64,000 nt of DNA from Octopus bimaculoides (Eukaryota). Position numbers and translations under genes: made by a program. The DNA lies in assembly GCF_001194135.2 (NCBI RefSeq), contig NC_068993.1, positions 11,327,568 to 11,391,567 of the forward strand, given 5' to 3'. This document shows positions 53,935 through 54,320 of the stretch, in pieces. Every line of letters starts with the position of its first letter. The first letter of the stretch is position 1. The notes under the pieces are model-generated. The model had not been told where the DNA came from. It saw nothing but the letters and a program-made list of their open reading frames with translations, and ran no database searches.

Positions 53935-54320
53935 AGCAACAGTAACATCCACCCTTAGGGGTCAGCCACATTTAAGTGGCAAATATACTTCACTTTATCG
54001 TGCAGTTACTGTTAACACCTCGTTCAGAGATTTAACATTGCTTGTTTTCACATTTTCGATATCAGTGAATAACTTCACTGGAAAAAGACTTATATATTGC
54101 CAAGGGATTGTCATTCTCATCGAAGGTCGGCGATTATCGTACGCTGAAGAAGGGAAATAACCCTGAAACTCGGGTCCGTACGTATCGCAGATCAAGATGG
54201 GAAGGATAACTTCCCTTGGCAAAAATAGACAGGACACAGATATGTGTCGATAAGCCAGCTGGAGGAGATGTTCTCCTGGGGCTAATAGCAACAGTAACAT
54301 CCACCCTTAGGGGTCAGCCA
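53935..54320 (+). mobile_element. Retrozyme-like non-autonomous retroelement: 352-bp hammerhead-containing unit plus 34-bp terminal redundancy
   Basis: Identical 34-mer AGCAACAGTAACATCCACCCTTAGGGGTCAGCCA at 53935-53968 and 54287-54320. Internal hammerhead and many hairpins. No coding capacity. Right end abuts (AT)n. Confidence 0.7.
54130..54188 (+). ncRNA. Type I hammerhead ribozyme (self-cleaving), predicted cleavage after GUC at 54176
   Basis: Read directly. Stem I is CGTACG(54138-43)/CGTACG(54177-82), extended by GCGAT(54130-34)/ATCGC(54184-88) across a small internal loop. Core CTGAAGA (54144-50). Stem II AGGG-AAATAA-CCCT (54151-64). GAAAC (54165-69). Short stem III AC-tcgg-GT. Cleavage triplet GTC (54174-76). 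All conserved core nucleotides are present. Confidence 0.88.

What the first reader, a model, noticed from the sequence alone, without database searches (positions are those of the whole stretch)
54130..54188. Intact type I hammerhead ribozyme
Seen in sequence: every conserved core nucleotide (CUGANGA, GAAA, GUC), a 4-bp stem II with R-Y closing pair and 6-nt loop, a 2-3 bp stem III with near-palindromic ACTCGGGT, and a 6+5 bp stem I interrupted by an internal loop. Established: natural type I hammerheads use a loop II / stem I bulge tertiary contact, and short-stem-III versions in animals often cleave as dimers. Inference: a possibly still active self-cleaving RNA, invisible to ORF-based annotation.
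Basis: partly seen in the sequence, partly recalled or inferred. Interest (0 to 1): 0.88.

Follow-up and report, generated by a model that had tools for sequence, protein, structure and literature searches.

The report
Hammerhead ribozyme inside a retrozyme repeat
A complete self-cutting RNA motif (type I hammerhead) really is at this spot, but it lies inside a ~350-bp mobile repeat of a well-described kind (animal "retrozymes"), so it is genuine yet ordinary, and whether it cuts is untested.

Summary
Positions 54130-54188 (+) hold every hammerhead core nucleotide, a 6+5 bp helix I with a UAU/U internal loop, a 4-bp helix II with a 6-nt loop, and a 2-bp helix III inside the near-palindrome ACUCGGGU. 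The cleavage site is 54176/54177. A covariance model built only from four experimentally self-cleaving retrozyme hammerheads finds this site end to end (27.3 bits, E~1e-5) as the best hit in the window. Rfam finds no hammerhead family here, even at E<=10.

The motif caps a 134-nt rod (z=-7.8) inside a 352-nt unit that is GC-richer than its flanks and highly self-paired (z=-6.9). The unit's last 34-37 nt are repeated just upstream, and it sits in (TA)n-rich DNA. This matches the known non-LTR retrozymes of animals, which are thought to be moved by Penelope-like elements.

Folding predicts that the active shape is favoured only as a double hammerhead. This locus shows one ribozyme copy, so unit-length RNA cannot be excised from it as assembled.

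I found no paralogs, so I could not test covariation within the family, and I could not identify the organism. Verdict: a real new member of a known kind, of low to moderate interest.

The parts
53932..53968 (+). Upstream copy of the terminal 34-37 nt (AAAAGCAACAGTAACATCCACCCTTAGGGGTCAGCCA). Read as a PLE-type 'tail' or partial upstream unit; a long target-site duplication is the alternative.
   Evidence: Direct repeat D9, 37 nt, 97% identity, spacing 352. Exact identity over 34 nt, 53935-53968 = 54287-54320. A+C-rich: 25 of 37 bases.
53969..54320 (+). One 352-nt retrozyme-like unit.
   Evidence: GC 42.6% against 25-29% in the flanks. Circular MFE -116 kcal/mol against -78 +/- 5.5 for shuffles, z=-6.9, 56% of bases paired. 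No assembly gap between 53175 and 54778.
54284..54320 (+). Downstream copy of the 34-37 nt terminal repeat, at the 3' end of the unit. It abuts (AT)5 TATT target-like DNA.
54097..54224 (+). Long imperfect hairpin (rod) that extends helix I. It is closed by UUGCCAAGGGA 54098-54108 pairing with UCCCUUGGCAA 54214-54224, and the hammerhead is at its tip.
   Evidence: strand folding on 54095-54228: -60.6 kcal/mol, shuffles -30.9 +/- 3.8, z=-7.84, 0 of 200 shuffles as good.
54130..54188 (+).
   Evidence: Sequence. Only descriptor hit in the window. Model R1 hit at 54138-54182, 27.3 bits, E~9e-6, all 13 modelled pairs formed.
54138..54143 (+). Helix I, 5' strand (CGUACG). It pairs with 54177-54182. 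Outward of it lie the loop 1 internal loop (UAU 54135-37 opposite U 54183) and the distal 5 bp (54130-34 with 54184-88).
   Evidence: pairs GC CG AU UA GC CG. The 3-nt/1-nt internal loop after 6 bp is the same geometry as in axolotl Ax353 (UUC/U) and Ax330 (UGC/U), whose sequences were taken.
54144..54150 (+). Core strand C3 U4 G5 A6 A7 G8 A9 (CUGAAGA).
54151..54164 (+). Helix II (AGGG/CCCU, 4 bp, A10.1-U11.1 at the base) with 6-nt loop 2, AAAUAA.
54165..54176 (+). G12 A13 A14, then the helix III near-palindrome ACUCGGGU (A15.1...U16.1), then C17. The predicted scissile bond is 54176/54177.
   Evidence: Alone, helix III does not fold as a hairpin (0.0 kcal/mol) but forms an 8-bp duplex between two copies (-10.3).
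54177..54182 (+). Helix I, 3' strand (CGUACG), which would be the 5' end of the 3' cleavage product.

Best explanation
The site is a canonical metazoan type I hammerhead ribozyme carried by a single (about 1.1-unit) genomic insertion of a ~352-nt non-autonomous retroelement of the non-LTR retrozyme class.

How the family is thought to work (established for other members, inferred here):
1. Multimeric transcripts fold so that two neighbouring ribozyme copies pair their palindromic helix III strands into one 8-bp helix, forming a double hammerhead.
2. Each copy then cuts after C17, leaving a 2',3'-cyclic phosphate and a 5'-OH.
3. Unit-length linear RNA is released and closed into a highly base-paired circle by a host tRNA ligase.
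4. Multimeric or circular RNA is copied and inserted into AT-rich DNA by the reverse transcriptase and GIY-YIG endonuclease of an autonomous Penelope-like element. This leaves a unit plus a 30-40 nt terminal extension.

At this locus, as assembled, there is one ribozyme. The copy is therefore most likely a young, dead-end 'monomer' offspring whose ribozyme is intact in sequence. It could cut only slowly on its own, or in trans with transcripts of sister copies.

Shown here: the motif, its fit to validated retrozyme ribozymes, the rod-like fold, the dimer preference in silico, the terminal repeat and the AT-rich flanks. Inferred: cleavage, circularisation and mobilisation by a Penelope-like element.
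For: - Motif: complete and unique in the window.
- Model test: a model built only from four retrozyme ribozymes that self-cleave in vitro (coral, mussel, two axolotl; sequences from PMC7229834 Suppl. Table 2; model) aligns 54138-54182 end to end. It scores 27.3 bits, E~9e-6, is the best hit with filters on or off, and no modelled pair is broken.
- Architecture: it equals the published 'canonical' metazoan type I form of helix I 6 bp, helix II 4 bp and helix III 1-2 bp capped by a 2-4 nt palindromic loop (PMC4209133).
- Dimer preference: the cofold MFE of two copies (-42.1 kcal/mol) is exactly the double hammerhead. The monomer MFE (-20.0) is a non-catalytic fold, and the monomer hammerhead fold is only -13.7.
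- Element: the unit is 352 nt and 42.6% GC with a self-paired circle (z=-6.9). This fits the published 170-400 nt, <50% GC, highly self-paired retrozymes.
- Insertion footprint: the 34-37 nt terminal repeat and (TA)n-rich flanks fit the 30-40 bp 'tail' and AT/(TA)n target preference of Penelope-like elements.
- Precedent: monomer copies are common in retrozyme families.
- Possible relative: there is weak collinear similarity to the Mytilus retrozyme Mg353 downstream of the ribozyme. It is z~5-6 against shuffles, but only p~0.01 against real genomic segments, and nhmmer gives E=0.48.
Against: - Rfam 15 reports no hammerhead family here, at gathering score or at E<=10.
- No second copy of the unit exists in the 64-kb window.
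- None was found in metagenome, prokaryote-genome or viral collections.
- None was found through spurious ORFs in the protein collection.
- So copy number, tandem arrays and covariation within the family are all untested.
- The model E-value scales to roughly 0.2-0.5 chance hits in a 2-3 Gb genome, so the motif score alone is not decisive genome-wide.
- A10.1-U11.1 replaces the usual G-C, which may lower activity.
- No RT or GIY-YIG remnant was detected in ten ORF fragments from across the window (none within ~6 kb of the element).
- The source organism is unidentified.
Confidence: 0.8

Rival explanations
1. The locus is really a tandem array of the 352-nt unit that a short-read draft assembly collapsed to about 1.1 copies. 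In that case several ribozymes sit in one transcript, and unit-length RNA can be made from this very locus.
For: The scaffold is a gap-rich draft with 23 N runs in 64 kb. Retrozymes typically occur as tandem repeats. The exact terminal overlap is 34 nt, a length that a de Bruijn-graph collapse could leave.
Against: There is no gap within 450 bp of the element. Both junctions with AT-rich flanking DNA are clean. Monomer copies are common in known families. I could not examine reads.
Confidence: 0.2
2. The 37-nt direct repeat is a long target-site duplication of host DNA flanking a 315-bp insert (53969-54283). On this reading it is neither terminal redundancy nor a 'tail' of the element.
For: Animal retrozymes are reported to have, 'when present', target-site duplications larger than the 4 bp seen in plant retrozymes. 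The two copies are nearly identical.
Against: The repeat is about 49% GC and A+C-rich, unlike the 25-29% GC of the surrounding target DNA. In the circular fold, its AACAGUAAC pairs with GUUACUGUU inside the unit. Its length fits the 30-40 bp PLE tail.
Confidence: 0.15
3. This is a chance match to the hammerhead consensus inside an unrelated structured repeat or hairpin. There is no ribozyme ancestry or activity.
For: Rfam is silent. Of 1500 shuffled windows, 2 reach helix I >=6 bp and helix II >=4 bp. Extrapolated to a gigabase genome, that means dozens of chance hits. The finding was selected by eye from many windows.
Against: Several independent features coincide. There is a full-length 27.3-bit match to validated retrozyme ribozymes. 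The 6-bp helix I is followed by a 3/1 internal loop and a distal helix, as in the axolotl ribozymes. Helix III is palindromic, and the double hammerhead is the cofold MFE. The unit's size, GC content, rod-like fold and terminal repeat are typical of retrozymes.
Confidence: 0.04
4. This is a solo pseudo-LTR fragment of an autonomous Penelope-like element, not a separate non-autonomous retrozyme.
For: Penelope-like elements carry hammerheads in their pLTRs, insert in partial tandems with 30-40 bp tails, and prefer AT-rich targets. Retrozymes appear to derive from pLTRs. A possible decayed min-hammerhead lies at 18643-18670.
Against: The hammerheads of metazoan Penelope-like elements are 'minimal' variants: helix II 7-8 bp, helix I 4-5 bp and no helix III. 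This one has the canonical form found in retrozymes. No RT or GIY-YIG ORF remnant was seen in the ORFs tested.
Confidence: 0.08

Closest known systems
Non-LTR retrozymes of animals with type I hammerheads (Cervera & de la Pena 2020, PMC7229834), especially Mytilus galloprovincialis Mg353 and axolotl Ax353/Ax330
   Same: Unit length matches: 352 nt against 353, 353 and 330. GC is below 50%. The predicted circle is highly self-paired. The ribozyme has a 6-bp helix I, a 4-bp helix II and an 8-nt (near-)palindromic helix III: ACUCGGGU here, ACGCGCGU in mussel and ACACGUGU in Ax353. The 3-nt/1-nt internal loop in helix I matches both axolotl motifs. A model made from these ribozymes recognises the site.
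   Different: Only about 1.1 units are present here, against tandem arrays in the described families. A10.1-U11.1 replaces G-C. Sequence similarity outside the ribozyme is weak and only suggestive (mussel) or absent (coral, axolotl). Expression, cleavage and circularity were not tested.
Newt/salamander satellite 2 and Schistosoma Sm-alpha hammerheads (classical type I, dimer-acting)
   Same: Helix III is short and palindromic and favours a double-hammerhead mechanism. Helix I is extended and internally looped. Loop 2 is a 6-nt A-rich loop. All lie in repeats of about 300-335 bp (the Sm-alpha loop sequence is from my own knowledge).
   Different: The primary sequence differs. The Rfam model built largely on such sequences (RF00163) does not score this site.
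Minimal hammerheads in pseudo-LTRs of Penelope-like elements (Cervera & de la Pena 2014, PMC4209133)
   Same: The catalytic core and type I topology are the same, and action as a dimer is presumed in both. The insertion footprint here (30-40 nt tail, AT-rich target) is the one described for Penelope-like elements.
   Different: Motifs of Penelope-like elements have a long helix II (7-8 bp), a short helix I and no helix III or loop 3, and they sit next to an RT/GIY-YIG ORF. None of this applies here.
Plant LTR retrozymes and hammerhead viroids / viroid-like satellites
   Same: They share the logic of a self-cleaving ribozyme embedded in a rod-like or branched small RNA that cycles through a circular form.
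   Different: Those carry type III hammerheads. Plant retrozymes also have LTRs, a PBS, a PPT and 4-bp duplications and measure 600-1000 nt. Viroids are not encoded in host DNA.

Membership tests
Hammerhead ribozyme (core definition, Hertel numbering) | C3 U4 G5 A6 N7 G8 A9 strand | tested here: met
   CUGAAGA at 54144-54150.
Hammerhead ribozyme (core definition, Hertel numbering) | G12 A13 A14, an A15.1-U16.1 pair, and H17 (not G) at the cleavage site | tested here: met
   GAA 54165-67, A 54168 pairing with U 54175, C17 = 54176.
Hammerhead ribozyme (core definition, Hertel numbering) | Three helices radiating from the core | tested here: met
   Helix I has 6 bp (+5 distal), helix II 4 bp, helix III 2 bp as a monomer or 8 bp as a dimer. 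Helix III is not stable as a monomer hairpin (0.0 kcal/mol).
Hammerhead ribozyme (core definition, Hertel numbering) | Mg2+-dependent site-specific self-cleavage | not testable with these tools
   Needs in vitro transcription of monomer and dimer constructs.
Canonical metazoan type I hammerhead (PMC4209133) | Open helix I of 6 bp, closed helix II of 4 bp, helix III of 1-2 bp capped by a 2-4 nt palindromic loop | tested here: met
   The site has 6 bp, 4 bp, and 2 bp plus a 4-nt loop within ACUCGGGU, which is self-complementary with two G-U pairs.
Canonical metazoan type I hammerhead (PMC4209133) | Conserved loop 1 / loop 2 nucleotides that make the tertiary contact | tested here: inconclusive
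   The geometry matches axolotl HHR_Amex1 (3/1 internal loop after 6 bp; 6-nt A-rich loop 2). The identities of the contact nucleotides are shown only in figures I could not read, and the mussel family lacks most of them yet still cleaves.
Rfam RF00163 Hammerhead_1 (and the other Rfam hammerhead families) | Score at or above the family's gathering threshold | tested here: not met
   No hit for the whole window at gathering score. No hammerhead family at E<=10 on 54050-54270 or on 54122-54196. I could not run a positive control with known type I sequences in that tool.
Retrozyme-type hammerheads (own model R1 from four self-cleaving examples; not a curated family) | Significant full-length match of sequence plus structure | tested here: met
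   27.3 bits, E~9e-6, model positions 1-44 of 44, no broken pair, top hit in the window. E-values are rough and the model rests on only four sequences.
Non-LTR retrozyme (PMC7229834) | Unit of ~170-400 bp carrying a type I hammerhead, GC <50%, no LTR/PBS/PPT | tested here: met
   352-nt unit, 42.6% GC. No long terminal repeats, only a 34-37 nt terminal redundancy.
Non-LTR retrozyme (PMC7229834) | Predicted circular RNA is stable and highly self-paired | tested here: met
   Circular MFE -116 kcal/mol, z=-6.9, 0 of 300 shuffles as low. HHR arm z=-7.8.
Non-LTR retrozyme (PMC7229834) | Tandem repetition and many copies per genome | tested here: inconclusive
   Only about 1.1 units here and no other copy in 64 kb. 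The source genome is not searchable with these tools, and collapse of an array in the draft assembly cannot be excluded. Monomers are a recognised state.
Non-LTR retrozyme (PMC7229834) | Expressed as linear and circular unit-length RNA | not testable with these tools
   Needs RNA-seq or a northern blot from the source organism.
Autonomous Penelope-like element (pLTR hammerhead) | Adjacent RT + GIY-YIG ORF and the minimal hammerhead form (helix II 7-8 bp, no helix III) | tested here: not met
   Helix II is 4 bp and helix III is present. No Pfam family at E<=0.1 in ten ORF fragments sampled across the window, none within ~6 kb of the element (limited test).
Penelope-like insertion footprint | Optional 30-40 bp 'tail' at one end; AT-rich or (TA)n target | tested here: met
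   A 34-37 nt repeat of the unit's 3' end lies at the 5' side. The flanks are 25-29% GC, with (AT)5 TATT directly after the element. A long target-site duplication would look the same.

The most novel reading that the evidence does not exclude
The 34-37 nt terminal redundancy next to (TA)n DNA may be the Penelope-type 'tail' on a canonical-hammerhead retrozyme monomer. That would be a direct integration footprint showing that invertebrate retrozymes are copied from multimeric or circular RNA by Penelope-like RT/GIY-YIG machinery, with reverse transcription starting at an A+C-rich stem-loop. So far the link is argued mainly from co-occurrence and pLTR phylogeny in vertebrates. A less likely variant is that this solo ribozyme has been co-opted to process a host transcript.
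Probability: 0.3. Interest if true: 0.45.

Novelty: new member of a known kind. Interest (0 to 1): 0.27.

Why it matters
Genomic hammerheads are invisible to gene finders, and here also to Rfam. Flagging them therefore improves repeat and non-coding RNA annotation. If the family proves abundant and expressed in the source organism, it adds one more lineage to the small-circRNA retrozyme system. The clean junctions of this copy could also help settle how such elements are inserted. By itself, one solo copy of a well-described repeat class does not change what is known about ribozymes or retroelements.

Tried and rejected
- Rfam: searched at gathering score on the whole window and at E<=10 on two tight sub-windows. 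No hammerhead family appeared; only weak snoRNA, RT-9 and algC noise.
- Paralogs in the window: blastn of the element against the window found only the 37-nt repeat.
- Paralogs via spurious ORFs: the 101-aa ORF on the minus strand of the element has no relative among 5.8 billion proteins.
- Pattern scans with the ribozyme: the single metagenome hit (L001) is GC-rich bacterial coding DNA without a helix I, so it is chance. Prokaryote genomes and viral contigs gave zero hits for the ribozyme, the tail and the rod arm.
- Literature string search for the ribozyme sequence returned only unrelated primers.
- Homology to published retrozymes: none to coral or axolotl. The mussel similarity looked significant against shuffles but weakened against real genomic segments (6 of 600 score as well), and nhmmer gives E=0.48. 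I keep it as suggestive only.
- Organism identification: Pfam on ten ORF fragments found nothing. A LINE-like ORF at 12827-13087 (-) has one 68%-identical cluster, in unnamed ENA assemblies with Mb-size contigs. Scanning 41 kb of those contigs with the ribozyme model gave nothing.
- MAFFT misaligned helix II when the window motif was added (A2), so I tabulated pairs by script instead.
- The 401-nt 'perfect inverted repeats' at 50866-53174 are runs of N, not real repeats.

Full report
**Setting.** The window is an AT-rich scaffold (34.8% GC without N). It is rich in microsatellites, has 23 runs of N, holds no long clean ORFs, and gives no Rfam hit at gathering score. It looks like intergenic, repeat-rich DNA of a eukaryote, most likely an invertebrate animal. 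That last point is an inference. I could not name the organism. A LINE-like ORF fragment at 12827-13087 (-) has a single 68%-identical relative, in unnamed ENA assemblies with megabase contigs.

**Observation.** Read directly, positions 54130-54188 on the + strand are:

GCGAU-UAU-CGUACG-CUGAAGA-AGGG-AAAUAA-CCCU-GAA-ACUCGGGU-C|CGUACG-U-AUCGC.

This gives:
- all invariant hammerhead nucleotides (C3-A9, G12-A14, A15.1-U16.1, C17);
- a 6-bp proximal helix I, then a 3-nt/1-nt internal loop and a 5-bp distal helix;
- a 4-bp helix II closed by A10.1-U11.1, with a 6-nt loop;
- a 2-bp helix III with a 4-nt loop, lying within a near-palindrome.

A type I descriptor that I wrote finds this as the only hit on either strand.

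**Chance.** Of 1500 dinucleotide-preserving shuffles of the window, 91 gave some hit with very loose helices, 21 with helix I >=4 bp and helix II >=3 bp, and 2 with the observed helix lengths. That is about 1e-3 per window. It would still mean tens of chance hits in a gigabase genome, so the bare motif is not enough, and the finding was selected by eye from many windows.

**Rfam.** No hammerhead family appears at gathering score, nor at E<=10 on 221 nt or 75 nt around the site. I could not run a positive control in that tool, so I cannot say whether RF00163 misses this whole subclass. As a membership test for RF00163, it is not met.

**Independent model test.** Supplementary Table 2 of Cervera & de la Pena 2020 (PMC7229834) prints four retrozyme clones that self-cleave in vitro: coral Am224, mussel Mg353, and axolotl Ax353 and Ax330. 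I aligned only their ribozymes (A1), imposed the hammerhead structure and built model R1. R1 aligns 54138-54182 end to end with 27.3 bits and E~9e-6. No modelled pair is broken, and this is the top hit with filters on or off. The next hits score 16.4 and 10.1 bits. The E-value is rough. Scaled to a whole genome it would be about 0.2-0.5, so this is again strong but not decisive alone.

**Architecture compared with validated ribozymes.**
- Helix I has 6 standard pairs in all five sequences, with different bases in each.
- Helix II has 4 pairs. Ax353 even has a U-U at 10.1-11.1, so the A-U here is a mild deviation.
- Helix III is a self-complementary 6-10-mer in all: ACUCGGGU here, ACGCGCGU in mussel, ACACGUGU in Ax353.
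- The 3/1 internal loop after 6 bp (UAU/U) has the geometry of Ax353 (UUC/U) and Ax330 (UGC/U).
- This is the published 'canonical' metazoan type I form: helix I 6 bp, helix II 4 bp, helix III 1-2 bp with a 2-4 nt palindromic loop (PMC4209133).

**Monomer or dimer.**
- The 59-nt motif alone prefers a non-catalytic fold (-20.0 kcal/mol) over the hammerhead fold (-13.7).
- Helix III alone does not form a hairpin (0.0) but forms an 8-bp duplex between two copies (-10.3).
- The cofold minimum for two copies (-42.1) is exactly the double hammerhead, with intermolecular helices I and III.
- This agrees with the dimer mechanism known for newt and axolotl ribozymes and the slow monomer rates reported for Ax353 and mussel.

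**Context.**
- The ribozyme caps a 134-nt rod (54095-54228; -60.6 kcal/mol, z=-7.84).
- A 37-nt direct repeat (53932-53968 and 54284-54320; 34 nt exact) defines a 352-nt unit.
- That unit is 42.6% GC between flanks of 25-29% GC. As a circle it folds to -116 kcal/mol against -78 +/- 5.5 for shuffles (z=-6.9).
- No gap lies within 450 bp, and there is no other copy in the window.
- Size, GC content, self-pairing and ribozyme type are those of animal non-LTR retrozymes: 170-400 nt, <50% GC, highly self-paired circRNAs.
- Monomer copies are a recognised state of such families.

**Insertion footprint.** Penelope-like elements insert as partial tandems. They often carry an optional 30-40 bp 'tail' at one end, prefer AT-rich or (TA)n targets, and start reverse transcription inside an A+C-rich stem-loop of a multimeric RNA (PMC8557442; PMC11167929). 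Here the unit's last 34-37 nt (A+C-rich, ending in a CCC-UUA-GGG hairpin) are repeated at its 5' side, and (AT)5 TATT follows the element directly. That fits mobilisation by a Penelope-like element, as proposed for retrozymes. A long target-site duplication, or a collapsed tandem array in a short-read draft, would look similar. I list both as rivals.

**Relatives.** No paralog or homolog was reachable. Similarity to the mussel retrozyme in the ~110 nt downstream of helix I, including a GGAGA...UCUCC hairpin at the same offset, is z~5-6 against shuffles. It is only p~0.01 against real genomic segments, and nhmmer gives E=0.48 although it is the top hit in the window. I treat it as a lead that the source may be a mollusc, not as a result.

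**Verdict.** The motif is real and well formed. It belongs by structure to the canonical type I hammerheads of animal retrozymes and sits in a typical retrozyme-like unit. As assembled, the locus has one ribozyme. It is most likely a young solo copy that cannot release unit-length RNA on its own and would cleave slowly, or in trans with sister transcripts. Cleavage, circular RNA, copy number and the mobilising element remain untested. This is a new member of a known kind, and interest is low to moderate.

Noticed in passing
window 18637-18686 (+), core 18643-18670: CUGAUGA, then one unpaired G, a 6-bp helix II (GUCACA/UGUGAC) with loop AACG, then GAAA. This is the 5' half of a hammerhead in the style of the minimal Penelope-element motifs (long helix II, bulged base at its 5' end). 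It has no valid helix III, cleavage site or helix I. Such half motifs are expected 0.017 times per shuffled window, and model R1 gives only 10.1 bits. It may be a decayed PLE-type ribozyme. An N gap starts at 18841.
   Followed up: partly
window 42658-42697 (+): Second-best hit of model R1 (16.4 bits, E~0.02). Only helix I (GCUUCA/UGGAGU) and CUGAU match. There is no GAAA and no helix II or III, so it is most likely chance.
   Followed up: partly
window 54343-54408 (+): Just downstream of the element lies a strong hairpin. UUCCAU pairs with AUGGAA around GCAGGCUCC-GAAA-GGAGGCUGU, a stem with a GNRA-like tetraloop. Rfam has no match and its nature is unknown. It could be part of another small repeat.
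   Followed up: no
window 12827-13087 (-) and 32158-32505 (+): These are degenerate LINE-like ORF fragments. The first has an '...ILWDF...IID.A.P.D' motif, and the second a C-terminal 'C..C...F....GL' motif. Reading them as retrotransposon tails rests on my own knowledge. Pfam finds nothing. The first has one 68%-identical relative in unnamed ENA assemblies ERZ25066843 and ERZ25066847, whose neighbourhoods are packed with RVT_1, rve and one GIY-YIG-bearing ORF.
   Followed up: partly
window 50866-51266 / 52774-53174 and other 'repeats' touching N runs: The 401-nt '100% complementary' inverted repeats reported by the repeat finder are runs of N matched to runs of N. They are assembly gaps, not biology.
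   Followed up: yes
window 21400-22900, 39800-40900, 55900-56200: Long trinucleotide and other low-complexity arrays give poly-I/L/Y/H/S/V/T pseudo-ORFs. Together with abundant (TA)n and (CA)n tracts, they dominate the window.
   Followed up: no
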